A stretch of DNA of 64,000 nucleotides, taken from the NCBI GenBank assembly GCA_002269645.1, contig NIVC01000036.1:62001-126000 (forward strand), written 5' to 3'. The stretch is from Macrostomum lignano. Its lineage: Eukaryota. Below the pieces are notes generated by a model. It was not told where the DNA came from and did not search any database. It saw nothing but the letters and a program-made list of their open reading frames with translations. Positions 1-50,714 of this stretch are shown here, one piece after another. The first letter of the stretch is position 1. Each line of letters begins with the position of its first letter. A program made the position numbers and the translations under genes.

Positions 1-722
1 ATACTGGAGCTGAGTCGTCAGAGACCAAATGAGACTCATGACACTTCAAATTATATCAAACTCTATCTGCAGTGTGCCAGTGCGTCCGCTGATTAGCACA
101 AACGTTCTCAGCACCATCAATTCAATTTCTCAAGAGATGCTGAAGCTCTTATCTAACTCTCTCTTCGCGTCCGCGATTTTGTAGCAGACATTTCTCCTTG
201 AGCTCTCGAGATGACATGTACTTATACTTTATACTCAACCCGCAACCCAGCAGAGTCAATGAAAGTTTCTCACCCACTTAAAAGTCAAACAAGCGAGCAC
301 TTGAAGAGACTTGAAGTTGCATGGCTTGGGACGCAAGGCAGGTGCTGCAGACTCAGACAGCCCTGTCAGTAGTTATTCAATCTGACACCAACAGACAAAC
401 AGGTGCAAGATCGTTCATTCAAAACTCAATATTTATTCTGGCAATACAGCTCTGTCGTCTTGTTGATTCTGAAGGAGCACGAGGTTCTCAAATTGACTTT
501 ATTTAGTCGCGTCTGGCAAACAGCAAGCCAGCCGGGACTCTTGCGCTTGCAGAGCCCTCTGCAATTTTTCAGCATTCTGTGCTTGAAGAACCTGTGAAAT
601 TGAGAGCTTGGAAACTGAATCGAAGAAACTGCAGTGAATGGCATCCGCAAACATCGCGCCGCGGCTGCTTCTGCTGCTGCTGCTGCTGCTGCTGCGTGTG
701 TGTGTGTGTGTGTGTGTGCCGC

Positions 723-3700
723 TCAACTCATGCGCTTCCATCTTTCTTTGATCCAGTTCCAGAACCTGTAGGCAGCGTCTGGTTGGTTCCACAGATCGCA
801 CAGGCCGGTGATGTTGTACTCCTGCCTCCTTTTCCACGTAGCCGGGCAATCCATTAAGTGCGAGTTGGATTCTTCGCCATCTCCACATAGCCTGCAGCTG
901 TCACTGTCCTGGTTGCCAAGTCTCTTGCGGAACTGGTTCAGTTCGAGGGAGTGTCCGGTACGGAAGCGTCTGAAGCTCACTGCTTCGCTGCGGTCTGCAT
1001 AGTCCTTCTTCCAGTTGCTTTTGGGGCCTTTGCTGTAGGTCTCTTTGCTGCGTTGGTGGCTCCATTCCTTCGCTCTGGTCAGGTCTCGGTAGATGGATCT
1101 CTTAACCGGGTTGGCAAGCACACCGGCTCCTCCAGCTGGTCTGCCGGCTGCGGCCTTTGCCGTGGTGTCGGCCTCTTCGTTCCCGCTGAGGCCACAGTGG
1201 GCCGGGACCCAGCAAATGATGAGCCGGCCGTTGGTCTCACTGGCTGCCTGCAAGTTGTTGGTGATTCTATTGGCTATCGGATTACTTCTCCTGCTGTGGA
1301 GGAGCTGGAGGCTGCTGAGGCTGTCCGTGGCAATGCAGGTGCTTTTTCCCCGGCCATGGTGACGGATCCAATCAGTGGCTGCTTGCAGTGCGTGCAGCTC
1401 AGCCTGGAGTGAGCTGCAGGGCTTGCCGGCGTCGACCTCAATACGGGTTTGTGTGTCCCAGCCGTCGATCCCTTTGGCTGTCACAACGACTCCGCCACCA
1501 CCTTTACCGTCACTGCTAACTGATCCGTCCGTGTAGAGGATGAGGTCTGCGTCGGCTGCGCAGCTTTGGATGATGTTCTCGGCCAGGTTCCTGTTGTCAG
1601 CTTCGCAAAGCTTGCGCCGGCCTTCCATGTGAATCGTGAATTTCCTTTCCTCCCATGGGGCCAGCGTGGCAGGTTGTTCATCCTTCTCCACTGTGATGTT
1701 GAGCAGACCATGGTCATCAAGCAACTCTTTAGCTCGGGCTCTCCAGCCTTTTCTTTTAAGCCTCTGCTTTGGCCCTTCGCCAACCAGCTCTCTTCTGATG
1801 CTACCGGGGGGCTGTCGTCTGAGGCGGTCGAATTTCTCGGCCCATCTGGCCTTGCTGCACACTTTGAGGGGCTCAAGGCCGCTTTCCATACTGAGCGCTT
1901 CAACCGGGGTAGTAGCCATGAGACCAGTCATGATCCTTTCAGCTGAGCGCTGTATCACTTCGAGCTTGTGCCAGCTGCTTTCGCTGATCCAAGGCATCCA
2001 TGCTGGAGCGCCGTACAGGATCTTGCTCTTAATAAGAGCTTCGTACGTGATTTTAATTAGCTCCAGGCTCCAGCCCCAGTCACTGCCAGCCAGTTTCCTT
2101 AATATGTTAACTTTCTTAAGGCATGCCTCTTTGATGTTGTTAACGTGCGTCTCGAACTTCAGCGTTCTGTCGAAGGTGAGCCCCAGGAACTTCGCGGTTG
2201 GGGCCCAGCTGATAGTGCTGCCGTACATCGTGAAGGTGGTGTCTTCTAGGCTGGTTCTAGTGCTAGTCGTGGACAGAAGCGTGAGGGAACACTTGCTTAC
2301 TGCAATCGGCATAAGCCAGTTATTGCTCCAAGTCTCCGTGAGCTGGATGGCTTTATCCATACTCGCGCGCATCTGGTCTTGCCTGCCAGAGGTCCAGATG
2401 GCGAGGTCGTCCGCGAAGCCGCTAACTTTGACCCCCTCGACCGCGCTGAGACCTTCTAGGAGGTCGTCAATGTAGACCAGGAACAGCAGCGGCGACAGGA
2501 CGGAGCCTTGCGGCAGGCCTTGCTCGAGCACTTTAAGCTTGCTGTCCTTGCCATTGAAGTTGACTTTAGCTAATCTGTGACTCAGCCACGCTTGTATCCA
2601 TCTGATCGAGAGCCTGCCCACTCCTTTGCTGATCAGTTTCCAGATGAGGCCGGTGCGGAGCACTTTGTCGAACGCTCGCTCGAAATCCACCAGTAGCAAA
2701 AGCGTATAGATTTTCTTCTGAAAGCCGTCATCGGCGTCCTGCGCGAGCCTGAGTAGTTGGTCCTCCGTGGATCTGCCAGCCCTAAACCCAGCCTGGCAGT
2801 CGCTAAGGAGCCCTTTGCTCTCGAGGTGGTAACTAATTCTGTTGGTGATAACTCTTTCAAGCCATTTGCCTAGGCAGGATGTGAGGCTGATCGGCCTGTA
2901 TGAGGGTATGCATTCAGCATCTTTGCCATGCTTCAGGAGCGGGATGATTCTAGCCGTGCGCCAGCTCTGGGGCACTTCGGCCTGCCTGTAGGAGTCGTTG
3001 AAGAGGCTAGTGATGACAGGTAGGCTGTTGGATGGCAATTCCTTGAGGAGCCTGGGGTGGATAAGGTCCTCGCCGGCCGCTTTGTTACCATCCATGGCTT
3101 CAAGCGCACTCACGACTTCGGACATGAGGATGGGCTGATCCATTTCTGCTTCCGCTGAAGTTTCCATCTCACGCAGGGCAGCGTTCGCACTACTTCTAAT
3201 TTTTCTTTGCTTTTTGGGAATAAAGTAGTTGCTGACTCGCGCGTATTCCTTCACAAATGCGTTGGCTTTGGCTCTGTCCGACAGGAAGGTCTTGCCACGA
3301 TGCTGGATGGATTTCCCCACTTGGTCTTTGGCGCTTTTGCCATTGAGGCGTTTGACTACTGACCACATTTTTGCACTGCTCGCGTTGTTACTCAGGTGGT
3401 TTCGCCCATCCTCCTCCTTGCTTTTCCTAATCTCAGACTTGAGCCGTTGTTCTTTTTCGGCCCATAGCTCCGGTTCAGCTGAGGCGTCGCACTTGCCAAG
3501 TTCCTCCAGGGCTTCCCTCACCTCGTCGTTGATGGAGGACCGGTTCCGGGTTGTGCGCGCAATGGTACCGACCGACGCTCTCGCAGCATTGATGATGATA
3601 TCCCTGATCTTTTTCTCATTCTCCTTAACGCATCCAGCGCCGCAAATCGATTCTGCCAGGCCGGCTTCGATGTTGTCTCTGTAGCCTGTCCAGTCAGCGG

Positions 3701-5693
3701 CTTTCCAATTCCAGCTGATGATCTTTCTGGCTGGCTCTCTGTTGCTGCAGCCATGCCCTAGCTGCATGATGATGGGGTGGTGGTCCGACCCGTGCAGCTG
3801 AGCTGTTTCCCAGGACCATATGGGTTCGTCCTCTCTGCTACAGAAGGTGATATCTGGCGATGATTTGATGCTCCCGGTGGGATCAACCCTAGTGACGCTG
3901 CCATCATTGAGCACAGCTAATTCATTGTTGTCCAGCCACTCACCGAGCGCTGTACCTCTGTCGTCACCTGGACAGATGTTGTCCCAGAGGGAGTGGTGGG
4001 CGTTAAAGTCGCCAGCGATTAGCCAATTCCTGCCTGCTGGGAGTTTGTTGATGGCCTCGCTGCTCACCGCTCTGGACCCTTCAGGCGGGATGTACACATT
4101 CGCTATCTGGACACTGTTGCCGTTGCCGTTGCTGGAGCGGTCTCTTCTCAGCCAGATCTTGGTAGCGATCATTTCGATGCCGTCCTTCTGGCATAGGTTG
4201 CATTCCACCTCTTCGTATTTGATTCCTGCTTTGATGAGCGTGGCTACGCCTCCTCCCCTACCGAATGTACTGAGGAGTTTCCTGTGCCGGTCTTTTCTGA
4301 CAATCTCGTAGCCTGGTATAGATAGGGTACCGTCTTCCTCCCTCAACTTGGTCTCTTGGAGCAGCATAACGTCAACGTTGTGGTCGTCCAGGAACTTCTC
4401 AAGCAGCGGCAGTTTGGCTCTGAGGTGGTCGCAGTTCCACTGCGCGACTCTGATGCTTTCGTTGCCGACCGTCCCTGCCGGACTGGTGGCATAATCAAGC
4501 GCTGAACCTCCGCGGCCTTCCCCCTTGGTCGCCCTGCACAGGCTGCATTCCCATCCACCATCTTTTTTGAACCTCTCTCTGCAGGCGCGGCTTTCAATGC
4601 CCGCGCAGGTCCAGTGCACGGTCTTCCCGCAGCCGCCGCAGCTGACCCCGGTGCCTCGCCTTCTGTACTTGTGACACTCCGCACAGTGTCCACCACTGTC
4701 CTTGGTAGCGCATTGCTGGTCACCGTCATAGGCGCCGCTGCTGCGGTGCTGCTCAGCCTCCGCGACGTCGTCCCCCGGGGGGCTGCTGCCGCATCTGGCG
4801 CATCTCCAGCTGGACTGGGCTTGGGTGTTGTACCTGCTGCATCCGCTACAGCTGCGGTGCACTCTAACTCCGCATCCCGTGCACTGAATTCCGCTGATAC
4901 CGAACTTCATATTTGCTTTACAGATGGAACATCTCCCTCCGCAGGCTTGGCTGACGCTAGCTGAGCCTTTTGGCTCTGTCCTACCATACTCCTCGACCTC
5001 TCCTGGCGGCTGGCTGGCTCCTTTCGTTTGTTCACTTTGAACGAACTCAGTGGCTTCCGCTACGGCTTTCTTCCAACCTGCTTTCTGCTGCGCAAAGCGG
5101 TCAGTCTCGGAGGTGGTGAATTCGTTATTTTTATTGGCTTTTTTAAAAAGAGTCTTATCATTGCATCCAAACCACCAAACCACCACTTCGTTGCCGACAC
5201 ATGGCCAGTCTTCAGCCTTCATCCTGGCTGGCCACCAGCCCCAGCCGCTCAGCTTGGCCCACACAACTTTCTGCTCCGACAGATGCAACTGGCCAGCAGC
5301 CTGGTTGGCTGCATCGGATTTCGCACTGCTGGTAGGCGGCCGGCGTTCACCAGGAGTAATGGGCCCAGCTGGCTGCAATGGCTCCTTCCTACAGCACGGC
5401 CCGATCCATTCTATGCTGGTAACCTTCTGCGCGTAGAAACTCCCTCTGTTCAGCCCACTGCACTTAAGGTGCAGCTGGCCAGAGCACTCCGAGCATTTTG
5501 GCCCTCTGTGAGTATGCCTTCCGCCGCAAACTCCGCACAGGTTCCTCCCCGGCGATGGTGGGCCGGGGTTAGATTCGACATCACCAGACAAGGTGATCAT
5601 CCTGGCGCTGACAGCGTAGCGGGCGCTGTCTTTGTAGTTGAACAGAACACCTCCTTTCGTTCCGCGATTGGTGTCGGGCCATCGCGTATCCAC
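723..5693 (-). CDS. Retrotransposon polyprotein: 2A, PHD, PWWP, PHD, PHD, APE endonuclease, RT, RNase H, C-terminal Zn motif
   Basis: Motifs: DVESNPGP; VVWAKLSGWGWWPAR; QWNCDHL...LLQETKL; GDFNAHH; SDHHPI; GLPQGSVLSPLLF...YIDD; FADDL; YTDGS...AELHAL...TDSLS...WVPAHCGLSGNEEAD; CRLCGDGEESNSHLMDC. The annotated start is a GTG inside the ribozyme; the first ATG is codon 32. Confidence 0.95.
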   Translation of the reverse strand: MDTRWPDTNRGTKGGVLFNYKDSARYAVSARMITLSGDVESNPGPPSPGRNLCGVCGGRHTHRGPKCSECSGQLHLKCSGLNRGSFYAQKVTSIEWIGPCCRKEPLQPAGPITPGERRPPTSSAKSDAANQAAGQLHLSEQKVVWAKLSGWGWWPARMKAEDWPCVGNEVVVWWFGCNDKTLFKKANKNNEFTTSETDRFAQQKAGWKKAVAEATEFVQSEQTKGASQPPGEVEEYGRTEPKGSASVSQACGGRCSICKANMKFGISGIQCTGCGVRVHRSCSGCSRYNTQAQSSWRCARCGSSPPGDDVAEAEQHRSSGAYDGDQQCATKDSGGHCAECHKYRRRGTGVSCGGCGKTVHWTCAGIESRACRERFKKDGGWECSLCRATKGEGRGGSALDYATSPAGTVGNESIRVAQWNCDHLRAKLPLLEKFLDDHNVDVMLLQETKLREEDGTLSIPGYEIVRKDRHRKLLSTFGRGGGVATLIKAGIKYEEVECNLCQKDGIEMIATKIWLRRDRSSNGNGNSVQIANVYIPPEGSRAVSSEAINKLPAGRNWLIAGDFNAHHSLWDNICPGDDRGTALGEWLDNNELAVLNDGSVTRVDPTGSIKSSPDITFCSREDEPIWSWETAQLHGSDHHPIIMQLGHGCSNREPARKIISWNWKAADWTGYRDNIEAGLAESICGAGCVKENEKKIRDIIINAARASVGTIARTTRNRSSINDEVREALEELGKCDASAEPELWAEKEQRLKSEIRKSKEEDGRNHLSNNASSAKMWSVVKRLNGKSAKDQVGKSIQHRGKTFLSDRAKANAFVKEYARVSNYFIPKKQRKIRSSANAALREMETSAEAEMDQPILMSEVVSALEAMDGNKAAGEDLIHPRLLKELPSNSLPVITSLFNDSYRQAEVPQSWRTARIIPLLKHGKDAECIPSYRPISLTSCLGKWLERVITNRISYHLESKGLLSDCQAGFRAGRSTEDQLLRLAQDADDGFQKKIYTLLLLVDFERAFDKVLRTGLIWKLISKGVGRLSIRWIQAWLSHRLAKVNFNGKDSKLKVLEQGLPQGSVLSPLLFLVYIDDLLEGLSAVEGVKVSGFADDLAIWTSGRQDQMRASMDKAIQLTETWSNNWLMPIAVSKCSLTLLSTTSTRTSLEDTTFTMYGSTISWAPTAKFLGLTFDRTLKFETHVNNIKEACLKKVNILRKLAGSDWGWSLELIKITYEALIKSKILYGAPAWMPWISESSWHKLEVIQRSAERIMTGLMATTPVEALSMESGLEPLKVCSKARWAEKFDRLRRQPPGSIRRELVGEGPKQRLKRKGWRARAKELLDDHGLLNITVEKDEQPATLAPWEERKFTIHMEGRRKLCEADNRNLAENIIQSCAADADLILYTDGSVSSDGKGGGGVVVTAKGIDGWDTQTRIEVDAGKPCSSLQAELHALQAATDWIRHHGRGKSTCIATDSLSSLQLLHSRRSNPIANRITNNLQAASETNGRLIICWVPAHCGLSGNEEADTTAKAAAGRPAGGAGVLANPVKRSIYRDLTRAKEWSHQRSKETYSKGPKSNWKKDYADRSEAVSFRRFRTGHSLELNQFRKRLGNQDSDSCRLCGDGEESNSHLMDCPATWKRRQEYNITGLCDLWNQPDAAYRFWNWIKERWKRMS
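5559..5600 (-). other. 2A-like ribosomal skipping peptide (MITLSGDVESNPG|P)
   Basis: Exact D-V-E-x-N-P-G-P consensus at 5582-5559. Confidence 0.85.
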
Positions 5694-5727
5694 AGCACCC
5701 CACTTGGCGGGTAGGAGGTCGTGCTGC
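5649..5727 (-). ncRNA. Candidate HDV-like self-cleaving ribozyme at the LINE 5' end
   Basis: Minus strand: P1 GCAGCAC/GUGCUGU with G1-U wobble; P2 ACCUCCU/AGGAGGU; P3 CCC/GGG; L3 GCCAAGU, whose CC pairs with the GG after P1' (P1.1); P4 CGCGAU/AUCGCG; J4/2 ...CGAA with the putative catalytic C at 5659. Confidence 0.75.
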
Positions 5728-6136
5728 TGCTGCTGCTGCTGAGCTCACCCGGTTTGTCTTCGGGCCAGGTGTTCCAAGCCGTGTCTGGCTTTCTCTGCAT
5801 CCGGCCAGAGTTTGTCAGAAACGAGCCTCGAGCCAGGTCGGACATCGAGTGCTCGAACCTTTGCAGCATGGAGCCGCGCTGTCAGGCGTTTAGCCTGGCT
5901 GACGGTGTTCGACAAGTGCAGCAAGTCGGTGAGGGACTGCGGCTGCTCCAGGAGAGGCCGGGTGTTCGTGAAGCAGCAGCCGGGACTCGAGCCGGGTGCG
6001 CTGTGTCCGTCCGACTTCGGAGACGACCACTGCGGAGTGAAGTACAAGCTGTTCAATGCGATCAACACCTGGGCAGTGCAGAGACAGAGGTGCGAGTCGG
6101 AGAGCGGTCTGGTGATCATGGCGGACGTGATCGACA

Positions 6137-7153: not shown

Positions 7154-8838
7154 GACTGACTGACTGACTGACTGACTGACTGACTGACTGACTGACTGAC
7201 TGACTGACTGACTGACTGACTGACTGACTGACTGACTGACTGACTGACTGACTGACTGACTGACTGACTGACTGACTGACTGACTGACTGACTGACTGAC
7301 TGACTGACTGACTGACTGACTGACTGACTGACTGACTGACTGACTGGCTGACTGACTGACTGACTGACTGGCTGACTGACTGACTGACTGACTGACTGGC
7401 TGACTGACTGACTGACTGACTGACTGACTGACTGACTGACTGACTGACTGACTGACTGACTGACTGACTGACTGACTGACTGACTGACTGACTGACTGAC
7501 TGACTGACTGACTGACTGACTGACTGGCTGACTGACTGACTGACTGACTGACTGACTGACTGACTGACTGACTGACTGACTGACTGACTGACTGACTGAC
7601 TGACTGACTGACTGACTGACTGACTGACTGACTGACTGACTGACTGACTGACTGACTGACTGACTGACTGACTGGCTGACTGACTGACTGACTGACTGAC
7701 TGACTGACTGACTGACTGACTGACTGACTGGCTGACTGACTGACTGACTGACTGACTGACTGACTGACTGACTGACTGACTGGCTGACTGACTGACTGAC
7801 TGACTGACTGACTGACTGACTGACTGACTGACTGACTGACTGACTGACTGACTGACTGACTGACTGACTGACTGACTGACTGACTGACTGACTGACTGAC
7901 TGACTGACTGACTGACTGACTGACTGACTGACTGGCTGACTGACTGACTGACTGACTGACTGACTGACTGACTGACTGACTGACTGACTGACTGACTGAC
8001 TGACTGACTGACTGACTGACTGACTGACTGACTGACTGACTGACTGACTGACTGACTGACTGACTGACTGACTGACTGACTGACTGACTGACTGACTGAC
8101 TGACTGACTGACTGACTGACTGACTGACTGACTGACTGACTGACTGACTGACTGACTGACTGACTGACTGGCTGACTGACTGACTGACTGACTGACTGAC
8201 TGACTGACTGACTGACTGACTGACTGACTGACTGACTGACTGACTGACTGACTGACTGACTGACTGACTGACTGACTGACTGACTGACTGACTGACTGAC
8301 TGACTGACTGACTGACTGACTGACTGACTGACTGACTGACTGACTGACTGACTGACTGACTGGCTGACTGACTGACTGACTGACTGACTGACTGACTGAC
8401 TGACTGACTGGCTGACTGACTGACTGACTGACTGACTGACTGACTGACTGACTGACTGACTGACTGACTGACTGACTGACTGACTGACTGACTGACTGAC
8501 TGACTGACTGACTGACTGACTGACTGGCTGACTGACTGACTGACTGACTGACTGACTGACTGACTGACTGACTGACTGGCTGACTGACTGACTGACTGAC
8601 TGACTGACTGACTGACTGACTGACTGACTGACTGACTGACTGACTGACTGACTGACTGACTGGCTGACTGACTGACTGACTGACTGACTGACTGACTGAC
8701 TGACTGACTGACTGACTGACTGACTGACTGACTGACTGACTGACTGACTGACTGACTGACTGACTGACTGACTGACTGACTGACTGGCTGACTGACTGAC
8801 TGACTGACTGACTGACTGACTGACTGACTGACTGACTG
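7154..8838. repeat. (GACT)n microsatellite, about 1.7 kb, with scattered GGCT variants
   Basis: Read directly from the sequence. Confidence 0.98.
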
Positions 8839-8910
8839 ATTTGGCAGCTAGATTCTGTCTTCATTGCCCCCCCCCCGTTCAAAAAACATGCATTTGATAT
8901 GCAGTTACTA

Positions 8911-10001
8911 TCAAAACGTTTTCATCGGGTAAATCTCTTTCTTAAGACTTACTAAGCCTTGGGGAGCCCTTGTCCAAATTTTCCGTTTTCCGCATCCGTA
9001 CTTGTGAATTAAAAAGTTCCACATGTACCCTGTCTGGGATTCACATAGACAGTACATTTTGATGCCAAACTTGTTTCGCTTGCTTGGTATGTACTGACGA
9101 AAAATCAGGCGTCCTTTGTACAGCACTAGCGATTTGTCAAGGCAGATGTTCTGCTCTGGCAAATAAGTATTCTGCATTGCCTGCTGCACAATTCTAAGAA
9201 ACGGTCGAATCTTTCTTAGAATGTCGTTCAAGTCTGCGATTGCGGTGCAGTCGTAGAAGCGCAGGAAGTGCATGATTTGTTTATATCGATCTCTTGACAG
9301 GCTTGAAGGTTGCTGCATGAAAGGGCACTGGTCGAACGGGTCCGTAGACCAGTAAAGGTCCAATTCCGGCTTTTTGCTCAGCCCAATGAAAAAGTTGGTC
9401 GCTATCACCTTCCTGATCTCGTTCAATGTGCAATTCTTCCAAGTCTTCAAGATTGGTGGCACCTCAGCTGGCTCTTCAGCTTGAAACCTTTCTAACTCAA
9501 ACCAAGCTTTCTTGTTGGTCCTCTCGCACAGATTTTTCATCAGCGCGTCAGTTAAAAATAGGTCGAAAAACCATTGAATATTGTTGTCTGGATCAGCTGG
9601 CGCCACCAAATCCGGATGCAAGCCAGAGGTCGCCATGAATTCCGAATCTGGCTCCTGCAAACCATTCTCTCCGGGTACGACGCGTTGCCAGCCACCTATT
9701 TCTTCATCCACGGATGCATTGTCTAGATCGGAAGCCTCATCGGACGAGTCAGTAGTGGAATCGCTGCTATCTTGATCCTCGTCATCAGACATCAACTGCT
9801 CAAAATTTGGTTCTTCGTTGAGTGATGCCATGTATAACTACTCGCATCTGTATGCCAACTCTTACAAAATCCAAGCTCTTATGCTAGGTTTTTACAGTGA
9901 ATTTCCTAACCACATTCATAAGATTTCCTAAAACTCCAGGTCTTTAGCGGACAGTCCAACCAACTGTATATGACATAACTATAAAATTCGTCAGGAAGAG
10001 G
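8911..10001 (-). mobile_element. 3'-truncated piggyBac (PGBD4-like) transposon; transposase fragment at 8911-9831
   Basis: Acidic N-terminus; FFDLFLTD..LCERTN; YWST; LSRDRYKQIMHFLRF; KIRPF; NICLDKSLVLYKGR..FRQYIPSKRNKFGIK. Left end is TTAA|CCTCTTCC (TTAA at 10002-10005). No second or third catalytic Asp region and no right end. Confidence 0.88.
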
Positions 10002-21899: not shown

Positions 21900-23960
21900 A
21901 TTAGACCGATTCTGATACTAGAAAGCTTTATATCAACATTTGAATATGATTGCAATTTCCAACAACTTCAACGCGTTTCGCACGCCATGGTACATCGTCA
22001 GGATTTATGAGAACGATTTGAGAAAGTGAGATTGAAAACGATTGATTAAATATTGGTTTTTGCAACGTACACAGGTAAGGAGGGTAAGATTGAAAACAAT
22101 TGATTACAACTTGGCTTTAACAACATACATAGGTAGGTAGGAGAGAAAATTATATATTGAGATTGAAAATTAAACCAAATGCACAAAATTCTTGTCCAGT
22201 GGTCAAAAGGCAGAATCAGGGGCGGTAGCTTAAGTAATTGAACGTCAAGTTAAGTGTACACAGCGTACACGACTGTGTCACTCACTGTTCAGAAAACGCG
22301 GAGAACGTGACCTGCACCACTATGTTGTAATTGGGTGTTGAGACTCGGGGTCTGAGCTTTTATGTGCAGGGCCTCGAGAATTCTAAGTTTGGAGTCAGTA
22401 TGGCTTTGGTCAATGATTTTAAAGTGTTCTTCTGGTTTGCAGTCATTGCAGTTAGTGCATTCAAGGAGGTGAGTTTGTATAGCAGATGGTTTGAGCCAGT
22501 GTTCCCTGATCCTCGTGTGTAGGTGTCTTTTGGTTTTCCCCACGTAGGAGACGCTCTGGTCCACAGAGCAGTTAAATTGGTAGACAACACCTGCACGCAG
22601 AGTACAAGGAACACGCGACTTTAATCTGCTAACAAAGTTCCCAATCTTTTTCGTGTGGAAGACGACCCGGATGTTACGATTGAAAGAGGCAAGGAATAAC
22701 CTACGCATTCTGTTTTTAAAGGCTGGAGATGGAGGTCCGAGGAAGGGGAGACGCAGAATGGGTTCAAATTCTTCAGTGGTAACAGATTGCTCAGGTTTTT
22801 GTTTGGTGATTTTGTCCGAGATGAACTTGTTGATGATTTTTTGAACCAGACAAACGGGGTAGTCATTTTGATGGAACAGTCTGGTGAGGAACTGCACCTC
22901 CCGGTCAAAGTTGATCCAGGTGTTACAGGTAGTGAAAGCTCTATGGATCAAACACCTCACGAGCCCAGTTTTCCATTGTCTGGGGCAAGTGGCTTGGAAG
23001 TTGAGAATGAGATTGGTAAAGCTTTTCTTACGGAAGACTTTTGTGGAGAGGGTTTCCTTACTGTAGTCAATGTCAATGTCCAGGAAGGGGAGTCTTTGGT
23101 CAACAGCATGTTCAACCGTGGATTTAATGTTCTTATGAGTGGAGTTGAGAGCGTGGAGGAACAGATCAATTTTTTGCTCCTGATCAAAGATGGCAAACGT
23201 ATCGTCGACGTAGCGCCTGTAGAATTTGGGGGCACAATTGAGAGACATCCAATTTTCGGTTTCCCAGTGGGCCAAGCAGACGTTAGCCAGAGTGGGGGCC
23301 AAGGGGCTTCCCATGGCACAGCCATCAACTTGCCTATAGTATTTAATAAAGATTCCAGAGGTAGCAAAGCCCAGGAGTTTTCTAAATGACGTCTTGGCCA
23401 TGGTGGGAGGGTTCGTGTTGTACACCAACTCAGTGGCATAGTCAATGGCCAGATCAGAGGGAATGTTGGTGAAGAGAGAAACAACATCAAAACTACATAG
23501 AGAGTCGGATCTGTTGAGCGTAGGGTTGGACTTTTGAAGGTCATTGAGGAAGTCTTTGTTGGATTTGGACATGAAATTGGAAGGAATGCAGGGCTTGATA
23601 AGGGAATCCAGGTACTTGGCAACTTCGTATTCAGCGGTTTTGACCCTGGAGACAATTGGTCTAAGGGGATTGTCAGGTTTGTGGACTTTACAAACTGCGT
23701 AGAGTTGTCCCGGTTGACTGCCACTAGGGAAGATACGCTGATGGATGTTTGGTTAGATGTGTTGTTTGATATGGTTGCGGAGGAAATTTTGAAGAGATCG
23801 TTCGGCTTTGAGGATGGGATGCGACATGGTGACAGTGTCATGAGTGTCCAGGCACTGGAATTTGGCTATCGCTTTACCCCTGCCCGTTTGTTTATTGGCA
23901 CTTGCCAGTGTGCTATGGTTTTAGACCCCGCCAATCAGATGGCGTTAGTCTATTTTTGTA
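21900..23960 (-). mobile_element. Penelope-like element (RT + GIY-YIG), degenerate upstream; open frame about 23752-22289
   Basis: LYAVCKVHKPDNPLRPIVS; SFDVVSLFTNIP; GCAMGSPLAP; RYVDD; LPFLD; VVYQFNC..SYVGKTKRHLHTRIREH; LEALHI. In-frame TAA near 23755. Boundaries approximate. Confidence 0.88.
21970..22001 (-). ncRNA. Minimal type I hammerhead ribozyme motif in the PLE 3' region
   Basis: CUGACGA-UGUAC(CAUGGC)GUGC-GAAA-CGCG-UU with a palindromic ACGCGU stem III. Stem I is weak. Confidence 0.55.
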
Positions 23961-29108: not shown

Positions 29109-29852
29109 TCAGTTAAACGGCGACAGGCACTCGCACAGACCGGTTCTGACTGCGCCGCGACTGTCAGCGTCTCCCAGAAAGGTTCGGGCGGCCACCGCGT
29201 TCTCGGTACCTCTGTACCGGTTGTCGGGTTCTCCGCTGCCCCACAGGCTGGCGTCGAAGCTGATGTCGCAGGCCACCCAGCGCCAGCCTCCGTCGGGCTC
29301 CGCACTGCCCGGAGTCTGGAAGCCGCCGACCCACATGGAGACGCCGCCACCCTTCGTGTTGAAAACTTGTCCGATGGCAGCCAGCTCGGCGCTGTCGATC
29401 ACGTCCGCCATGATCACCAGACCGCTCTCCGACTCGCACCTCTGTCTCTGCACTGCCCAGGTGTTAATCGCATTAAAGAGCTTGTACTTCACTCCGCAGT
29501 GGTCGTCTCCGAAGTCGGACGGACACAGCGCACCCGGCTCGAGTCCCGGCTGCTGCTTCACGAACACTCGGCCTCTCCTGGAGCAGCCGCAGTCCCTCAC
29601 CGACTTGCTGCACTTGTCGAACACGAACAGCTGGCACGGACCGTCAGCCAGGCTGAACGCCTGACAGCGCGGCTCCATGCTGCAGAGCAGCGAGCACTCG
29701 ATGTCCGACCTGGCTTGAGGCTCGTTTCTGACGAAATCTGGCCGGATGCAGAGAAAGCCAGACATGGCTTGGTACACCTGACCTGAAGACACACCGGGTG
29801 AGCTCAGCAGCAGCAGCAGAAGCAGCTGCGGCGCGATGTTTGCCGATACCAT
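29109..29852 (-). CDS. Secreted PAN/apple + CTLD protein, intact (247 aa, class A 5' end)
   Basis: Poly-Leu signal peptide; IECSLLCSMEPRCQAFSLADGPCQLF (PAN-like Cys pattern); WVGGFQ..WRW..W.SGEPDN..GLCE (CTLD). Confidence 0.85.
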   Translation of the reverse strand: MVSANIAPQLLLLLLLSSPGVSSGQVYQAMSGFLCIRPDFVRNEPQARSDIECSLLCSMEPRCQAFSLADGPCQLFVFDKCSKSVRDCGCSRRGRVFVKQQPGLEPGALCPSDFGDDHCGVKYKLFNAINTWAVQRQRCESESGLVIMADVIDSAELAAIGQVFNTKGGGVSMWVGGFQTPGSAEPDGGWRWVACDISFDASLWGSGEPDNRYRGTENAVAARTFLGDADSRGAVRTGLCECLSPFN

Positions 29853-30989: not shown

Positions 30990-31272
30990 CTCTCCTCTCC
31001 CCTCCTGGAACAGCCGCAGTCCCTCACCGACTTGCTGCACTTGTCGAACACGAACAGCTGGCACGAACCGTCAGCCAGGCTGAACGCCTGATAGCGCGGC
31101 TTCATGCTGCAGAGGTTTGAGCACTCGATGTCCGACCTGGCTCGAGGCTTGTTTCTGACGAACTCTGGCAGAGAAATCCAGACACGGCTTGGAACACCTG
31201 GCCTGAAGACACACCGGGTGAGCTCAGCAGCAGCAGCAGAAGCAGCGGTGGCGCGATGTTTGCCGATGCCAT
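30990..31272 (-). pseudogene. 5' fragment of PAN+CTLD (class A), with a 7-nt deletion and 3' truncation
   Basis: MASANIAPPLLLLLLLSSPGVSSGQVFQAVSGFLC then frameshift; homology ends after CGCSR. Confidence 0.88.
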
Positions 31273-33067: not shown

Positions 33068-33659
33068 CGTTGCTGGGCTCTCCGCTGCCCCACAGGCTGG
33101 CGTCGAAGCCGTCGGCTCCGCACTGCCCGGAGTCTGGAAGCCGCCGACCCACATGGAGACGCCGCCACCCTTCGTGTTGTAAATTTGCTGCACATGAGCC
33201 AGCTCATTGCCGTCGATCACGTCCGCCATGATCACCAGACCGCTCTCCGACTCGCACCTGTCTCTGCACTGCCCAGGTGTTGATCGTATTGAAGAGCTTG
33301 TACTTCACTCCGCAGTGGTCGTCTCCGTAGTCGGACGGACACAGCGCGCCCGGCTCGAGTCCCGGCTGCTGCTTCACGAACACCCGGCCTCTCCTGGAGC
33401 AGCCGCAGTCCCTCACCGACTTGCTGCATTTTTCGAAAACGAACAGCTGGCACGGACCGTCAGCCAGGCTGAACGCCTGGCAGTGCGTCTCCCTGCTGCA
33501 GAATGAAGAGCACTGGATGCTCGATTTAGCGTGTGAATAGGTTCTTATGAACTCAGGCCGGGTGCAGAGCGAGCCGTTGATGGCGTGGAACACCTGGCCT
33601 GGGGACACACCGGGTGAGCTCAGCAGCAGCAGCAGGGACACAACTTTCATTGATGTCAT
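33068..33659 (-). pseudogene. Divergent PAN+CTLD copy (class B) with frameshift, internal deletion and 3' truncation after EPSN
   Basis: PAN patch TYSHAKSSIQCSSFCSRETHC; frameshift at about 33260; WRWVACNI deleted; fused to the 3' flank of the 31713 copy. Confidence 0.88.
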
Positions 33660-44659: not shown

Positions 44660-47645
44660 GATATGCAGTGGGGTGTCGGGGATTCAGTGGTGTGTCGGGG
44701 ATTCAGTAGTGTGTCAGGGGATTCAGTGGGGTGTCGGGGATTCAGTAGTGTGTCAGGGGATTCAGTGGGGTGTCAGGGGATTCAGTAGGGTGTCGGGGAT
44801 TCAGTAGGGTGTCGGGGATTCAGTAGGGTGTCAGGGGATTTAGTGGGGTGTCGGGGATTCAGTAGTGTGTCAGGGGATTCAGTGGGGTGTCAGGGGATTC
44901 AGTAGGGTGTCGGGGATTCAGTAGGGTGTCGGGGATTCAGTAGGGTGTCAGGGGATTTAGTGGGCTGTCAGGGGATTCAGTAGGGTGTTAGGGGATTCAG
45001 TGGGGTATCAGGGGATTCAGTGGAATGTCAGGGGATTAAGTGGGGTGTCAGGGGATTCAGTGGGGCGTCAGGGGATTCAGTGGGATGTCAGGGGATTAAG
45101 TGGGGTGTCAGGGGATTCAGTGGGGTGTCAGGGGATTCAGTGGGGTGTCAGGGGATTCAGTGGGGTGTCAGGAGATTCAGTGGGATGTCAGGGGATTCAG
45201 TAGGGTGTCAGGGGATTCAGTGGGGTGTCAGGAGATTCAGTGGGGTGTCAGGGGATTCAGTAGGGTGTCGGGGATTCAGTAGTGTGTCAGGGGATTCAGT
45301 AGGGTGTCAGGGGATTCAGTAGGGTGTCAGAGGATTCAGTAGGGTGTCAGGGGATTTAGTGGGGTGTCAGGGGATTCAGTGGGGTGTCAGGGGATTCAGT
45401 GGGGTGTCAGGGGATTCAGTGGGGTGTCAGGGGATTCAGTAGGGTGTCAGGGGATTCAGTGGGGTGTCAGGGGATTCAGTGGGGTGTCAGGGGATTCAGT
45501 GGGGTGTCAGGGGATTCAGTGGGGTGTCAGGGGATTCAGTGGGGTGTCAGGGGATTCAGTGGGGTGTCAGGGGATTCAGTGGGGTGTCAGGGGATTCAGT
45601 AGGGTGTAAGGGGATTCAGTGGGGTGTCAGGGGATTCAGTGGGCTGTCAGGGGATTCAGTGGGATTTCAGGGGATTCAGTGGGATGTCAGGGGATTAAGT
45701 GGGGTGTCAGGGGATTCAGTGGGGTGTCAGGGGATTCAGTGGGGTGTCAGGGGATTCAGTGGGGTGTCAGGGGATTCAGTGGGGTGTCAGGGGATTCAGT
45801 AGGGTGTCAGGGGATTCAGTGGGGTGTCAGGAGATTCAGTGGGGTGTCAGGGGATTCAGTAGGGTGTCGGGGATTCAGTAGTGTGTCAGGGGATTCAGTA
45901 GGGTGTCAGAGGATTCAGTAGGGTGTCAGGGGATTTAGTGGGGTGTCAGGGGATTCAGTGGGGTGTCAGGGGATTCAGTGGGTGTCAGGGGATTCAGTGG
46001 GGTGTCAGGGGATTCAGTAGGGTGTCAGGGGATTCAGTGGGGTGTCAGGGGATTCAGTGGGGTGTCAGGGGATTCAGTGGGGTGTCAGGGGATTCAGTGG
46101 GGTGTCAGGGGATTCAGTGGGGTGTCAGGGGATTCAGTGGGGTGTCAGGGGATTCAGTAGGGTGTAAGGGGATTCAGTGGGGTGTCAGGGGATTCAGTGG
46201 GGTGTCAGAGGGTTCAGTGGGATGTCAGGGGATTCAGTAGGGTGTCAGGGGATTCAGTGGGGTGTCAGGAGATTCAGTGGGGTGTCAGGGGATTCAGTAG
46301 GGTGTCGGGGATTCAGTAGTGTGTCAGGGGATTCAGTAGGGTGTCAGGGGATTCAGTAGGGTGTCAGGGGATTCAGTAGGGTGTCAGGGGATTCAGTAGG
46401 GTGTCAGGGGATTCAGTAGGGTGTCAGGGGATTTAGTGGGGTGTCAGGGGATTCAGTGGGGTGTCAGGGGATTCAGTGGGGTGTCAGGGGATTCAGTGGG
46501 GTGTCAGGGGATTCAGTAGGGTGTCAGGGGATTCAGTGGGGTGTCAGGGGATTCAGTGGGGTGTCAGGGGATTCAGTAGGGTGTAAGGGGATTCAGTGGG
46601 GTGTCAGGGGATTCAGTGGGGTGTCAGGGGATTCAGTGGGGTTTCAGGGGATTCAGTGGGGTGTCAGATGATTCAGTGGGGTGTCAGGGTATTCAGTGGG
46701 GTGTCAGATGATTCAGTGGGGTGTCAGGGGATTCAGTGGGTGTCAGGGGATTCAGCGGGGTGTCAAATGATTCAGTGGGGTGTCAGGGGATTCAGCGGGG
46801 TGTCAAATGATTCAGTGGGGTGTAAGGGGATTCAGTAGGGTGTAAGGGATTCAGTAGCGAGTAAGGGATTCAGTGGGGTGTCAGAGGATTCAGTGGGGTG
46901 TCAGGGGATTTAATGGGGTGTCATGGGATTCAGTAGCGTGTAAGGGGATTCAGTGGAATGTCAGGGGGATTAAGTGGGGTATCAGGGGATTCAGTGGGGT
47001 GTCAGGGGATTCAGTGGGGTGTCAGATGATTCAGTGGGGTGTCAGGGGATTCAGTGGGGTATCAAGGGATTCAGTGGGGTGTCAGGGGATTCAGTGGCGT
47101 TTCAGGGGATTCAGTATGGTGTCAGGGGATTCAGTAGGGTGTCAGGGGATTCAGTAGGGTGTCAGGGGATTCAGCGGGGTGTCAAATGATTCAGTGGGGT
47201 GTCAGGGGATTCAGTGGGGTGTCAGATGATTCAGTGGGGTGTCAGGGGATTCAGTGGGGTTTCAGGGGATTCAGTGGGGTGTCAGGGGATTCAGTGGGGT
47301 GTCAGGGGATTCAGTAGGGTGTCAGGGGATTCAGTGGGTGTCAGGGGATTTAGTAGGGTGTCAGGGGATTCAGTGGGGTGTCAGGGGATTCAGCGGGGTG
47401 TCAAATGATTCAGTGGGGTGTCAGGGGATTCAGTGGGATGTCAGGGGATTAAGTGGGGTGTCAGGGGATTCAGTGGGGTGTCAGGGGATTCAGTGGGGTT
47501 TCAGGGGATTCAGTGGGGTGTCAGATGATTCAGTGGGGTGTCAGGGTATTCAGTGGGGTGTCAGATGATTCAGTGGGGTGTCAGGGGATTCAGTGGGTGT
47601 CAGGGGATTCAGTGGGGTGTCAGGGGATTCAGTGGGGTGTCAGAG
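44660..47645. repeat. 20-bp satellite (GGGGTGTCAGGGGATTCAGT)n, about 3 kb
   Basis: Read directly from the sequence. Confidence 0.98.
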
Positions 47646-49638
47646 AATGCAGTCAGAGATTCCACGATAGCAGTGAGATTCCACATAAGAAACAGTGAGA
47701 TTCCACATAAGAAACAGTGAGATTCCACGGTGGAAGCAGTGAGATTCCACATAGAGGCCGTGATTGTGCGCAGGTAGCCCGTAATGAATAGACGCGTGGA
47801 AGCGAACAGCCGCTTTTTACTTGGCCCGTTGACAATGGACCCGCAACCCGGCTATTATTAAGCATCGCCCGATAGAGATGCGAGACTGACTGACTTGCCT
47901 GACTTTATTCTTCCTGAGCCAAAGTAATAAAAATAATGAGGCTGAGTCTTGACCGTCTGGTGGCTGCTGTATCAATATTGATATAGATTTACAGTGTACA
48001 CCATTAGGGGTTATATAAAGCTAATCTTATACCAAGTATTTGATACTGAGCTTTAGGAAGATTTAGGGGTTTAGAAAAAAATTCCCATGACAATATTATT
48101 GGATAGATTATGATGCTGCTAGTTGAGGCTAATCCTGATTTAGCACGCGAAGTGAGGAAATTCACGCACCGGATTTTGCTTGGGACTTTTGAAGGGCGAA
48201 TATTGGATGCGGTCTCTGTCGAAGATGGAGGGAATAGGGGGAGAGAGTGATGGAGGGTATTAGAGGCAGAGAGAAGGGGAGAGAGAGTGAGGGAGAGTAT
48301 GAGAGAGGGAGAGAGGGAGAGAGAAGGAGAGAGGGAGAGAGGGACAGAGAAGGAGAGAGGGAGAGAGAGGGAGAGAGTTAGGTAGAGCGAGAAGGGGAGA
48401 GAGACTGAGGGAGAGTATCAGAGAGGGAGAGAGAGAAGGAGAGAGGGAGAGAGGGAGAGAGGAGAGAGGGAGAGAGAGAGAGAGAGGAGAGAGAGGGAGA
48501 GAGAGGAGGAGAGAGGGAGAGAGGGAGAGAGGGAGAGAGGGAGAGAGGGAGAGAGGGAGAGAGAGAAAGAGAGAGGGGGAAAGGGAGAGAGGGAGAGAGG
48601 AGAGAGGAGAGAGGGAGAGAGAGGGAGAGAGGGAGAGAGGAGAGAGGGAGAGAGAGGGAGAGAGGGAGAGAGGAGAGAGAGGAGAGAGAGGGAGAGAGGG
48701 AGAGAGAGAGAGAGAGAGGAGAGAGAGGGAGAGAGGGAGAGAGGGAGAGAGAGAGAGAGGGAGAGAGGGAGAGAGGGAGAGAGGGAGAGAGGGAGAGAGA
48801 GGGAGAGAGAGGGAGAGAGGGAGAGAGGGAGAGAGAGGGAGAGAGGGAGAGAGAGGGAGAGAGGGAGAGAGAGGGAGAGAGGGAGAGAGGGAGAGAGGGA
48901 GAGAGGGAGAGAGAGAGGGAGAGAGAGAGAGGGAGAGAGGGAGAGAGGGAGAGAGAGGGAGAGAGGGAGAGAGAGTGAGGGAGAGAGGGAGAGAGGGAGA
49001 GAGGGAGAGAGGGAGAGAGGGAGAGAGAGGAGAGAGGAGAGAGGAGAGAGAAGGGAGAGTGAGGGAGAGGGAGAAGGGGAGAGAGTGACGGAGAGTATGA
49101 GAGAGGGAGAAGTAGAGAGAGAGTTAGGGAGAGAGAGTGAGGGAGAGAGGGAGAGAGAGGGAGAGAGGGAGAGAGAGGGAGAGAGGGGAGAGAGGGAGAG
49201 AGGGAGAGAGAGGGAGAGAGGGAGAGAGGGAGAGAGAGGGAGAGAGGGAGAGAGAGTGAGGGAGAGAGGGAGAGAGAGGAGAGAGGGAGAGAGAGGGAGA
49301 GAGAGGGAGAGAGGAGAGAGAGGGAGAGGGAGAGAGAGAGGAGAGAGAGGAGAGAGAGGAGAGAGGGAGAGAGTGAGGGAGAGAGGGAGAGAGAGGGAGA
49401 GAGGGAGAGAGGTAGAGAGAGAGAGGAGGAGAGAGGGAGAGAGGGAGAGAGGGAGAGAGGGAGAGAGGGAGAGAGAGGGAGAGAGAGGAGAGAGGGAGAG
49501 AGGGAGAGAGAGGGAGAGAGGGAGAGAGAGGGAGAGAGGGAGAGAGAGGGAGAGAGGGAGAGAGGGAGAGAGAGGAGAGAGAGGGAGAGAGGGAGAGAGA
49601 GGGAGAGAGGGAGAGAGTGAGGGAGAGAGGGAGAGAGA

Positions 49639-50595: not shown

Positions 50596-50631
<36 letters not shown>

Positions 50632-50714
50632 AGGGAGAGAGGGAGGAGAGAGAGAGAGAGAGAGAGGAGAGAGAGGAGAGGAGAGAGAGAGAGAGAGAGA
50701 GGGAGAGAGAGGAG

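What the first reader, a model, noticed from the sequence alone, without database searches (positions are those of the whole stretch)
5649..5741. HDV-like ribozyme whose P1 helix is completed by the (CAG)n target: a possible trinucleotide-repeat-coupled retrotransposon
Seen: the LINE 5' end folds into a full HDV double pseudoknot, with one extra A between P2 and P3 and a G rather than U at the first L3 position. Six of the seven 5' P1 bases (GCAGCA, 5727-5722) are indistinguishable from the flanking (CAG)n duplication; only the C at 5721 is element-specific. Known: Ingi/L1Tc elements carry 5' HDV-like ribozymes, and in some R2 elements P1 is partly supplied by co-transcribed target rDNA. Inference: this element may process itself out of any antisense read-through transcript of a CAG tract, or carry a CAG-like 5' end that favours integration at such tracts. 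That would be an R2-like dependence on a microsatellite target, which I do not know to be described.
Basis: partly seen in the sequence, partly recalled or inferred. Interest (0 to 1): 0.85.

Follow-up and report, generated by a model that had tools for sequence, protein, structure and literature searches.

The report
Self-cleaving ribozyme heading a repeat-targeting LINE
An intact jumping gene (LINE) inserted in a CAG repeat starts with a well-supported HDV-type self-cleaving RNA fold whose first helix looks like the repeat; relatives show that this helix belongs to the element, so it is a new variant of known biology, not a new mechanism.

Summary
On the minus strand, 5727-5649 folds into a complete HDV-like double pseudoknot. 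It has P1, P1.1, P2, P3, P4 and a catalytic C at 5659. It sits at the 5' end of an intact 1625-aa single-ORF LINE (2A peptide, PHD/PWWP, APE, RT, RNase H) flanked by (CAG)n on both sides.

A covariance model built only from six relatives (42% protein identity or less) finds this site alone in 64 kb (E 6e-7). Across eight ribozymes 95% of cells pair, and 10 of 19 pairs show compensatory changes.

Most sampled relatives carry (CAA)n or other trinucleotide 3' tails. They abut (CAA)n/(CAG)n tracts or form head-to-tail arrays, so coupling to trinucleotide repeats is real at clade level.

P1's 5' strand is carried by the element. It covaries in relatives (GCCCCAC, GUCACAC, CUCCCUC, CAGGAUC). One GCAGCAC copy and one GUCACAC copy lie in non-repeat DNA. 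GCAGCAC looks ancestral and conserved while P2 and P4 drift, which fits selection for CAG microhomology at 5' joining. That last point is inferred.

Only one copy of this family was available, and catalysis is untested.

Novelty: a new variant combining known parts (R2-like, L1Tc-like, microsatellite-specific LINEs).

The parts
5728..5741 (-). 5' flanking (CAG)n tract. TRF calls the tract 5722-5741 because it runs into P1.
5649..5727 (-). HDV-like self-cleaving ribozyme fold. Predicted cleavage lies between A5728 and G5727.
   Evidence: Manual fold. Leave-one-out CM hit at E 5.7e-7. Covariation.
5721..5727 (-). P1 5' strand GCAGCAC. The first six bases equal two CAG units.
   Evidence: P1 pairs in 100% of cells, with 3 pairs changed on both sides.
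5692..5698 (-). P1 3' strand GUGCUGU. U5692 forms the G.U pair at the cleavage site.
5713..5719 (-). P2 5' strand ACCUCCU. It pairs with 5649-5655 (AGGAGGU).
   Evidence: Five of 7 P2 pairs show compensatory changes.
5699..5711 (-). P3 (CCC/GGG) enclosing L3 (GCCAAGU). C5707 and C5706 form P1.1 with G5690 and G5691.
   Evidence: P1.1 pair types seen are CG, UG, AU and UA.
5663..5686 (-). P4 hairpin: CGCGAU / AUCGCG with a 12-nt loop.
   Evidence: Length and sequence vary among relatives.
5656..5662 (-). J4/2 (GAACGAA) with the predicted catalytic C at 5659. CGAA is invariant in 8 of 8 ribozymes.
5559..5582 (-). 2A 'ribosome skipping' motif DVESNPGP. The first ATG (5600-5598) lies only 13 codons before the skip site.
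723..5600 (-). Intact single LINE ORF of 1625 aa. Domains: PWWP-like 5043-5270 (below the Pfam cut-off), PHD 4791-4931, APE endonuclease 3768-4445, reverse transcriptase 2172-2909, RNase H 1146-1547, then a C-terminal Cys/His motif.
5601..5726 (-). Leader that stays open in the ORF frame from the ribozyme's first bases, with no ATG. An in-frame TGA at 5747-5745 lies just upstream of the repeat.
696..718 (-). The element's 3' tail, (CA)11. It begins four bases (GCGG) after the stop codon, so there is virtually no 3' UTR.
664..695 (-). 3' flanking (CAG)n tract: the target repeat, duplicated or split by the insertion.

Best explanation
Window 5727-696 (minus strand) is one intact copy of a single-ORF, APE-type LINE. 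It resembles Ingi/L1Tc (2A peptide, APE, RT, RNase H) and was inserted into a genomic (CAG)n tract.

Shown:
- Its first 79 nt form an HDV-like double-pseudoknot ribozyme that is conserved, with compensatory changes, in relatives of 42% protein identity or less.
- The ribozyme's first base coincides with the junction to the repeat.
- The ORF frame is open from the first ribozyme bases to the 2A motif.
- Most sampled relatives carry trinucleotide tails ((CAA)n, (CCA)n(CAA)n, (AGC)n). They lie in or next to such repeats and in head-to-tail arrays.

Inferred:
- The element is co-transcribed from upstream. The ribozyme cuts 5' of G5727 and releases a unit-length RNA that starts GCAGCAC.
- Translation begins without a fixed AUG in or near the ribozyme, as proposed for R2. 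The 2A site then discards the leader peptide.
- Target-primed reverse transcription starts where the short-repeat tail can anneal to a nicked repeat.
- At the 5' end, the GCAGCA start of the RNA gives six bases of homology to a CAG target. This eases second-strand joining and lets the flank restore P1 if the first bases are lost.

P1 is therefore the element's own sequence and mimics the target. It is not supplied by the target.
For: Ribozyme:
- Fold read directly from the sequence.
- Leave-one-out CM gives a single hit in 64 kb at 5649-5727(-), E 5.7e-7.
- 94.7% of cells pair, 10/19 pairs carry double changes, 0/500 shuffles reach this, and slid controls pair at 35-51%.
- An independent ribozyme in L162 that was not used for training scores 68 bits.
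- 70 bacterial or viral loci that match the 21-nt core pattern give no CM hit.

LINE:
- Pfam finds APE, RT, RNase H and PHD. The ORF is intact.

Repeat coupling:
- (CAG)n lies on both sides in the window.
- Relatives L001, L002, L003, L004 (two full copies), L005, L006, L007, L008, L010, L015, L088, L089, L161 and L162 have trinucleotide tails and/or repeat-abutting 5' ends.
- Tandem arrays occur in L001, L004, L088 and L161.

P1 is carried by the element:
- P1 variants covary.
- L162 has GCAGCAC next to non-repeat DNA.

GCAGCAC is conserved:
- It is present in the deepest branch (the window) and in L002, L001 and L006 of a 100/100-supported clade, while 5 of 7 P2 pairs changed.

Open frame:
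- 13 of 14 elements have no stop in the 2A frame between P1 and NPGP. The other 28 frames hold 66 stops.

Precedents:
- R2 ribozymes and the annealing model for 5' joining (PMC3774820).
- Ribozyme-assisted translation initiation (PMC6765202).
- 2A in single-ORF LINEs (PMC3894237).
Against: - No cleavage assay has been done.
- Rfam HDV-type models do not match.
- L3 starts with G, not the usual U. This is shared only with L004a and could weaken catalysis.
- Only one copy of this particular family could be examined. Its tail is (CA)n rather than a trinucleotide, so its own target preference is extrapolated from relatives.
- Three other CAG tracts in the window are unoccupied.
- L087, L090, L162 and the partial ribozyme in L009 have non-repeat 5' flanks.
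- L010 inserts in (AGC)n with a non-CAG P1, so CAG mimicry is not required.
- Conservation of GCAGCAC could be simple inheritance. The tree needs no convergence.
- Metagenome contigs break at repeats. This may enrich repeat-flanked ends in the sample.
Confidence: 0.7

Rival explanations
1. True R2-like dependence. The inherited element starts inside or after P1, for example at C5721. The CAG target supplies the P1 5' strand, so the ribozyme is active only after landing in a CAG tract.
For: - Six of seven P1 bases cannot be told from the flank.
- In L004b the first P1 base is A, readable as part of (CAA)n, and it pairs with a U that accepts A or G.
- In L087 the first P1 base G320 lies inside the putative 9-bp target duplication CACACATGG.
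- R2 provides a precedent (PMC3774820).
Against: - HDV-type cleavage is 5' of P1, so the whole strand stays on the RNA and is copied.
- Relatives have non-repeat P1 strands starting exactly at the junction, with compensatory 3' strands.
- L162 carries the full GCAGCAC with no CAG flank.
- L010 sits in (AGC)n with a different P1.
Confidence: 0.12
2. The ribozyme is real, but the CAG resemblance of P1 has no function. Target choice is set only by the endonuclease and by 3'-tail annealing, and GCAGCAC is an inherited accident.
For: - GCAGCAC can be explained by a single ancestral state.
- Sister-clade elements use unrelated P1 sequences in the same kinds of repeats.
- L162 integrated without a CAG flank.
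Against: - P1 stays identical across lineages in which P2 and P4 have turned over.
- In Drosophila R2, P1 varies freely unless the target constrains it (PMC3774820).
- Four of five GCAGCAC-type 5' ends abut at least two further CAG units, even where the rest of the flank is CAA-rich.
Confidence: 0.3
3. The fold is a chance or decayed look-alike and does not cleave.
For: - No Rfam match.
- Atypical G at the first L3 position and an extra unpaired A.
- Loose descriptor scans have a high background.
Against: - Leave-one-out CM hit at E 5.7e-7, at the exact 5' end of an intact ORF.
- Compensatory changes in all four helices, including the 2-bp P1.1.
- The CGAA catalytic strand is invariant.
Confidence: 0.05

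Closest known systems
R2 retrotransposon 5' HDV-like ribozyme (Eickbush and Eickbush; PMC3774820)
   Same: - An HDV-like ribozyme sits at the 5' end of a repeat-targeted LINE and processes it out of a co-transcript.
- The ORF is open toward the ribozyme without a conserved AUG.
- The proposed role of target-matching 5' RNA sequence in annealing the cDNA to the target is the same.
- P1 sequence is frozen when it matches the target.
   Different: - R2 has a restriction-like endonuclease and a single rDNA site. In many species its P1 5' strand is genuinely upstream 28S sequence.
- Here the endonuclease is APE-type and the targets are trinucleotide repeats.
- Here P1 begins at the junction and is carried by the element.
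- A 2A peptide is present here.
L1Tc/ingi elements of trypanosomatids (L1TcRz within Pr77, plus an N-terminal 2A; PMC3185411, PMC4035085, PMC3894237)
   Same: - Single ORF with APE, RT and RNase H.
- HDV-like ribozyme in the first ~77 nt.
- 2A motif at the N-terminus of the ORF.
- Tendency to sit near repeats and in tandem.
   Different: - L1Tc has a poly(A)-type end and only relative site preference, and its Pr77 doubles as a promoter.
- Here the tails are (CA)n or trinucleotide repeats, and PHD/PWWP-like modules precede APE.
- Sequence relatedness to Pr77 and RT-tree placement with reference Ingi elements were not tested.
Microsatellite-specific LINEs. Dong (TAA)n, Waldo (ACAY)n, Mino (AC)n, Kibi (TC)n and Koshi (TTC)n are named from memory of Kojima and Fujiwara 2004. 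Togen (TG)n and some HERO families are from PMC4640811.
   Same: - Insertion into simple repeats.
- The repeat is found on both sides.
- Tails made of the repeat.
- Head-to-tail arrays.
   Different: - Different clades (R4, R1, Tx1, NeSL, HERO) and different repeat units.
- I found no report of a 5' ribozyme whose P1 equals the repeat unit, nor of CAG/CAA as the target. Repbase could not be searched.
HDV-like ribozymes in other LINE clades: R1 (including R6 and SART), R4, RTE and LOA/Baggins (Ruminski et al. 2011, as summarised in PMC5786205)
   Same: 5'-terminal HDV-like ribozymes that liberate promoter-less LINEs, some of them specific for repeats.
   Different: Those elements lack the 2A leader. 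The primary paper was not retrievable here, so I could not check whether any of their P1 strands overlap the target.

Membership tests
HDV-like self-cleaving ribozyme | Nested double pseudoknot with P1, P1.1, P2, P3 and P4 in the canonical order | tested here: met
   All helices were placed by hand. 94.7% of cells pair, with compensatory changes in P1, P2, P3 and P1.1. P4 is present but is not column-consistent among relatives.
HDV-like self-cleaving ribozyme | Catalytic cytosine in J4/2, followed by purines and directly before the P2 3' strand | tested here: met
   C5659 lies within CGAA. CGAA is invariant in 8/8 aligned ribozymes.
HDV-like self-cleaving ribozyme | A ~7-bp P1 that starts at the cleavage site, usually closed by G.U or G-C | tested here: met
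   G5727.U5692 closes the helix and P1 is 7 bp. P1 pairs in 100% of cells in 8 sequences.
HDV-like self-cleaving ribozyme | L3 loop consensus: U at the first position, two C for P1.1, G at position 6 | tested here: inconclusive
   The window has GCCAAGU. The CC and the G at position 6 are kept, but the first base is G. L004a shares this (GACCAGU). The other six start with U.
HDV-like self-cleaving ribozyme | Match to curated Rfam HDV-type covariance models | tested here: not met
   No Rfam family matches at gathering score, or at E<=10 on 5500-5900. Rfam models cannot encode the pseudoknots, and I recall them as narrow.
HDV-like self-cleaving ribozyme | Mg2+-dependent self-cleavage giving a 5'-OH product | not testable with these tools
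   Needs in vitro transcription and cleavage mapping.
Microsatellite-specific LINE | Many independent copies of one family at the same repeat | tested here: inconclusive
   The window holds only one copy of its family. At clade level, more than 12 junctions abut CAA/CAG-type repeats. Exceptions are L087, L090, L162 and the partial copy in L009.
Microsatellite-specific LINE | Target repeat present on both sides of a single insertion | tested here: met
   Window: (CAG)n at 5741-5722 and at 695-664. The same holds in L002 and L010.
R2-type ribozyme with target-derived P1 | The P1 5' strand lies in target sequence upstream of the element boundary, so cleavage is upstream of the junction | tested here: not met
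   In relatives P1 starts at the junction and is non-target sequence. L162 has GCAGCAC without a CAG flank. In the window itself the boundary cannot be resolved.
R2-type ribozyme with target-derived P1 | Restriction-like endonuclease and an rDNA target | tested here: not met
   Pfam finds an APE-type Exo_endo_phos domain. There is no rRNA in the window.
Ingi/L1Tc-type LINE | Single ORF with APE, RT and RNase H, no ORF1, and an N-terminal 2A | tested here: met
Ingi/L1Tc-type LINE | RT phylogeny places it with reference Ingi elements | not tested
   No reference Ingi, Vingi or I sequences were available. The nearest named relative is an unclassified Macrostomum lignano protein.

The most novel reading that the evidence does not exclude
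The ribozyme and the repeat form a self-repairing pair. Because the RNA's first six bases equal the target repeat, any loss or addition at the 5' junction is rewritten by the CAG flank into a working P1. Only insertions in CAG-type tracts would then give daughters that can process themselves. Further, the leader frame reads CAG/CAA as glutamine, so copies landing in frame in poly-Gln coding repeats could be translated from the host message, with 2A releasing the LINE protein.
Probability: 0.12. Interest if true: 0.75.

Novelty: new variant of a known kind. Interest (0 to 1): 0.5.

Why it matters
This extends 5' HDV-like ribozymes to a widespread clade of APE-type LINEs. I could not find the clade described, and it is seen mostly in marine, freshwater and soil metagenomes. 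Its members live in trinucleotide repeats.

It offers a second, independent system beside R2 for asking how the sequence left at the RNA 5' end shapes 5'-junction formation. Here the target is a simple, tunable repeat.

The element is compact. It has a 79-nt ribozyme, a leader without a fixed AUG, a 2A site, one ORF and almost no 3' UTR. That makes it a tractable model for cap-independent LINE translation and for repeat-directed insertion.

It also shows a way in which LINEs can seed and extend CAA/CAG arrays.

Tried and rejected
- Rfam at gathering score and at E<=10: no hit.
- Plain MFE folding: no signal, as expected for a pseudoknot.
- A home-made HDV descriptor: 183 hits on the plus strands against 212 on the reverse complements when loose, and 18 against 16 when tightened. 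Descriptor hits were therefore trusted only at junctions.
- CM R1 does not reach the sister clade, even with filters off. The P1 helices for L007, L014, L015, L089, L090, L010 and L088 are hand-read and tentative.
- Pattern scans of the bacterial/archaeal genome collection and of viral contigs: 70 loci, all chance matches by the CM.
- Search for more copies in the window: none.
- The window's own ORF is not in the protein collection, so same-genome copies could not be fetched.
- Host identification failed. The best named hits, for both the LINE and the neighbouring piggyBac ORF, are Macrostomum lignano at 42-45% identity.
- Ruminski 2011 and the Vingi paper are not held in the library.
- The idea that the poly-Gln frame is conserved was weakened. 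L007 reads the repeat as Gln, but its close relative L089 reads it as Thr, L008 as Thr and L010 as Ser.
- Joining the two flanks gives an open frame of only about 110 codons (poly-Ser) across the empty site. That is too short to call a host exon.
Full report
WHAT IS THERE

Read on the minus strand, the window holds one intact LINE from 5727 to 696.
- A single ORF runs from ATG 5600 to the stop at 725-723. It encodes 1625 aa without interruption.
- Pfam finds an APE-type endonuclease, a reverse transcriptase, RNase H and a PHD finger. It also finds a PWWP-like stretch that scores below the curated cut-off.
- Thirteen codons after the first ATG lies a canonical 2A motif, DVESNPGP (5582-5559).
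- The 3' UTR is almost absent. After the stop come GCGG, then (CA)11 (718-696), then (CAG)n (695-664).
- Upstream of the element lies (CAG)6.7 (5741-5722).
- The copy therefore sits inside a CAG tract. No second copy or fragment exists in the 64 kb, and three other CAG tracts are empty.

THE RIBOZYME FOLD

- P1: GCAGCAC 5727-5721 with GUGCUGU 5698-5692, with G.U at the cleavage site.
- P2: ACCUCCU 5719-5713 with AGGAGGU 5655-5649.
- P3: CCC/GGG around a 7-nt L3.
- P1.1: C5707/C5706 with G5690/G5691.
- P4: a 6-bp hairpin.
- J4/2: C5659 followed by GAA.

Rfam does not recognise the fold. An MFE fold is uninformative. A loose descriptor has a high false-positive rate. The case therefore rests on comparison with relatives.

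RELATIVES

Protein searches found several hundred relatives, nearly all on unnamed 4-12 kb metagenome contigs. The best share 36-42% identity. I fetched the DNA of about 90 loci.

In the closest clade the 5' ends of L001, L002, L004 (two copies), L006 and L087 fold the same way. So does a copy in L162 that was not used for training.

Tests of the fold:
- On the eight-sequence alignment 94.7% of cells form standard pairs.
- Ten of 19 pairs show changes on both sides: three in P1, five in P2, one in P3 and one in the 2-bp P1.1.
- No shuffle out of 500 reaches these values.
- Sliding the partners by 1-3 columns drops pairing to 35-51%.
- A covariance model built from the six relatives alone finds exactly one site in the window on either strand: 5649-5727(-), full length, 36 bits, E 5.7e-7.
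- Seventy bacterial and viral loci that contain the 21-nt core pattern score nothing with the model.

I regard the fold as established. Catalysis is untested.

IS P1 SUPPLIED BY THE TARGET?

In every clear case the first P1 base is the first base after the flanking sequence. HDV-type cleavage is 5' of P1, so the whole strand stays on the RNA and is inherited.

The strand is not always repeat-like.
- L004a has GCCCCAC/GUGGGGC after (CAA)n.
- L088b has CUCCCUC/GAGGGAG after (CAA)n.
- The sister clade has CAGGAUC/GAUCCUG or CAGGGCC/GGCCCUG.
- L010 is flanked by (AGC)n on both sides, and its P1 is roughly CCCAUC/GAUGGG (hand-read and tentative).
- L087 has GUCACAC/GUGUGGC. It lies in a C2H2 zinc-finger gene array with a putative 9-bp duplication and no repeat tail.
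- L162 carries the very same GCAGCAC as the window, but it abuts non-repeat DNA, namely an opposite-strand truncated LINE copy.

A strict, R2-like dependence on the target for P1 is therefore not supported.

WHAT REMAINS OF THE COUPLING IDEA

In an RT-region tree the window, L087, L009, L002, L001, L003, L004a, L006, L004b and L005 form a clade with 100/100 support. The window is the deepest branch.

GCAGCAC occurs in the window, L002, L001 and L006 (and in L162, which was not in the tree). It is therefore most simply ancestral. It has stayed identical while P2 and P4 were rewritten. In Drosophila R2, P1 varies freely. In silkmoth R2 it is frozen because it matches the 28S target (PMC3774820).

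Four of the five GCAGCAC-type ends are preceded by further CAG units even where the rest of the flank is CAA-rich. In L004b the first P1 base is A, as if taken from (CAA)n, and it pairs with a U that accepts either A or G.

The best reading is that the RNA's 5' end mimics the target repeat. After reverse transcription the cDNA end can anneal to the CAG target to prime second-strand synthesis. This is the model proposed for R2 (PMC3774820). Small losses at the junction would be rewritten into a working P1. This is inference. Simple inheritance without function remains a serious rival.

REPEAT ASSOCIATION OF THE CLADE

Tails seen in relatives:
- (CAA)n in L001, L003, L004, L005, L009, L013, L015, L161 and L162.
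- (CAA)n(CAG)n in L002.
- (CCA)n(CAA)n in L089 and L090.
- (AGC)n in L010.

Head-to-tail arrays occur in L001, L004 and L088. L161 is a mixed array in which a (CAA)7 tail is followed directly by a sister-clade 5' end.

The window's (CA)11 tail is unusual. Its own target preference rests on a single insertion plus this clade-level pattern. Assemblies break at repeats, which may bias which ends are seen.

TRANSLATION

This point was noticed while checking junctions. In 13 of 14 elements the 2A frame contains no stop from the first P1 base to NPGP, over 56-145 codons. The other 28 frames hold 66 stops.
- The first in-frame ATG is not conserved, and it is absent in L015 and L088a.
- In the window the only ATG is 13 codons before the skip site. 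I judge that too short for 2A to act, which is an inference.
- An in-frame TGA lies just upstream of the repeat.

This fits initiation in or near the ribozyme without a fixed AUG, as proposed for R2 and L1Tc (PMC6765202). The 2A site would then remove the leader peptide.

Most repeat-flanked copies read the repeat as glutamine. L008, L010 and L089 do not. Fusion to host poly-Gln proteins is therefore only a remote possibility.

COMPARISON WITH KNOWN SYSTEMS AND NOVELTY

What is already known:
- Target-derived P1 is known in R2 (PMC3774820).
- 2A leaders are known in single-ORF Ingi-type LINEs (PMC3894237).
- Microsatellite-specific LINEs are known in several clades (PMC4640811).

I found no description of a CAG/CAA-associated APE LINE with a 5' ribozyme whose P1 equals the repeat unit. 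Repbase and the key 2011 paper could not be consulted.

I rate this a new variant of a known kind, of moderate interest.

HOST

The host is unidentified. The window is rich in satellites. It also holds a piggyBac transposase fragment and a Penelope-like element. The best named relatives of two of its transposons are from the flatworm Macrostomum lignano at 42-45% identity.

Noticed in passing
window 5601-5727 (-), and the same region in L001, L002, L004, L006, L007, L010, L014, L015, L087, L088, L089: The LINE reading frame is open from the first base of the ribozyme to the 2A motif in 13 of 14 elements. That is 0 stops, against 66 stops in the other 28 frames. There is no conserved ATG. In the window the only ATG is 13 codons before the 2A skip site. 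This suggests AUG-independent initiation in or near the ribozyme.
   Followed up: partly
window 4791-5270 (-): The LINE protein carries chromatin-reader-like modules ahead of the endonuclease. They are a PHD finger (above the Pfam cut-off) and a PWWP-like stretch (22 bits, below the cut-off). They may tether the element to chromatin.
   Followed up: no
window 7154-8839 and 8911-9831 (-): A 421-unit (GACT)n array lies directly next to a 306-aa piggyBac transposase fragment (DDE_Tnp_1_7, E 2e-40). The best named relative of the fragment is from Macrostomum lignano at 42% identity.
   Followed up: partly
window 22289-23841 (-): A Penelope-like element remnant. An RT plus GIY-YIG ORF of 427 aa overlaps a second ORF in another frame, which probably reflects a frameshift.
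   Followed up: no
window 44666-57658: A dense block of satellites and purine-rich arrays. It includes a 20-mer repeated 150 times at 44666-47643 and GA-rich arrays at 48262-54531. GC and AT skew are extreme (GC skew about 0.5).
   Followed up: no
window 29786-29847, 31206-31269, 33604-33635: Three further CAG/CTG tracts in the window carry no LINE insertion.
   Followed up: no
window 500-663 joined to 5742-5869 (-): Joining the two flanks in the AGC (Ser) phase gives one open frame of about 110 codons across the empty site. This might be a host exon with a poly-Ser tract, but it is too short to decide.
   Followed up: partly
L006 1-360: A unit of about 330 bp lies between two (CAA)n tracts. 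It starts with GCCCCAC and has a possible GUGGGGU partner, but the CM hit is weak (E 2.5). It may be a short non-autonomous derivative with its own ribozyme, like the R2 SIDEs.
   Followed up: no
L009 3585-4065: After the LINE's (CAA)5 tail comes a tRNA-like sequence resembling a SINE head. About 400 bp further on lies the first 38 nt of another ribozyme (E 0.0012), which is not preceded by a repeat.
   Followed up: no
L161 4400-4440 and L162 129-190 (-): Two unusual arrangements. In L161 a (CAA)7 tail is followed at once by CAGGAUC, the 5' end typical of the sister clade. In L162 a GCAGCAC-type ribozyme lies head-to-head against a 5'-truncated copy, with no repeat between them.
   Followed up: partly
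L007 ~305-345, L012 ~480-520, L089 ~290-330, L090 ~405-445: The sister clade shares a conserved nucleotide and peptide block just upstream of 2A: GGGTTTTTGGA...GGGTC.., translated as GFLE..G..PAFD.R. It could be a translation or RNA-structure signal.
   Followed up: no
L087 312-320 and ~5026-5034: A close relative inserted in a C2H2 zinc-finger gene array has a 9-bp direct repeat, CACACATGG, at both ends and no repeat tail. The first P1 base (G320) falls inside the duplication.
   Followed up: partly
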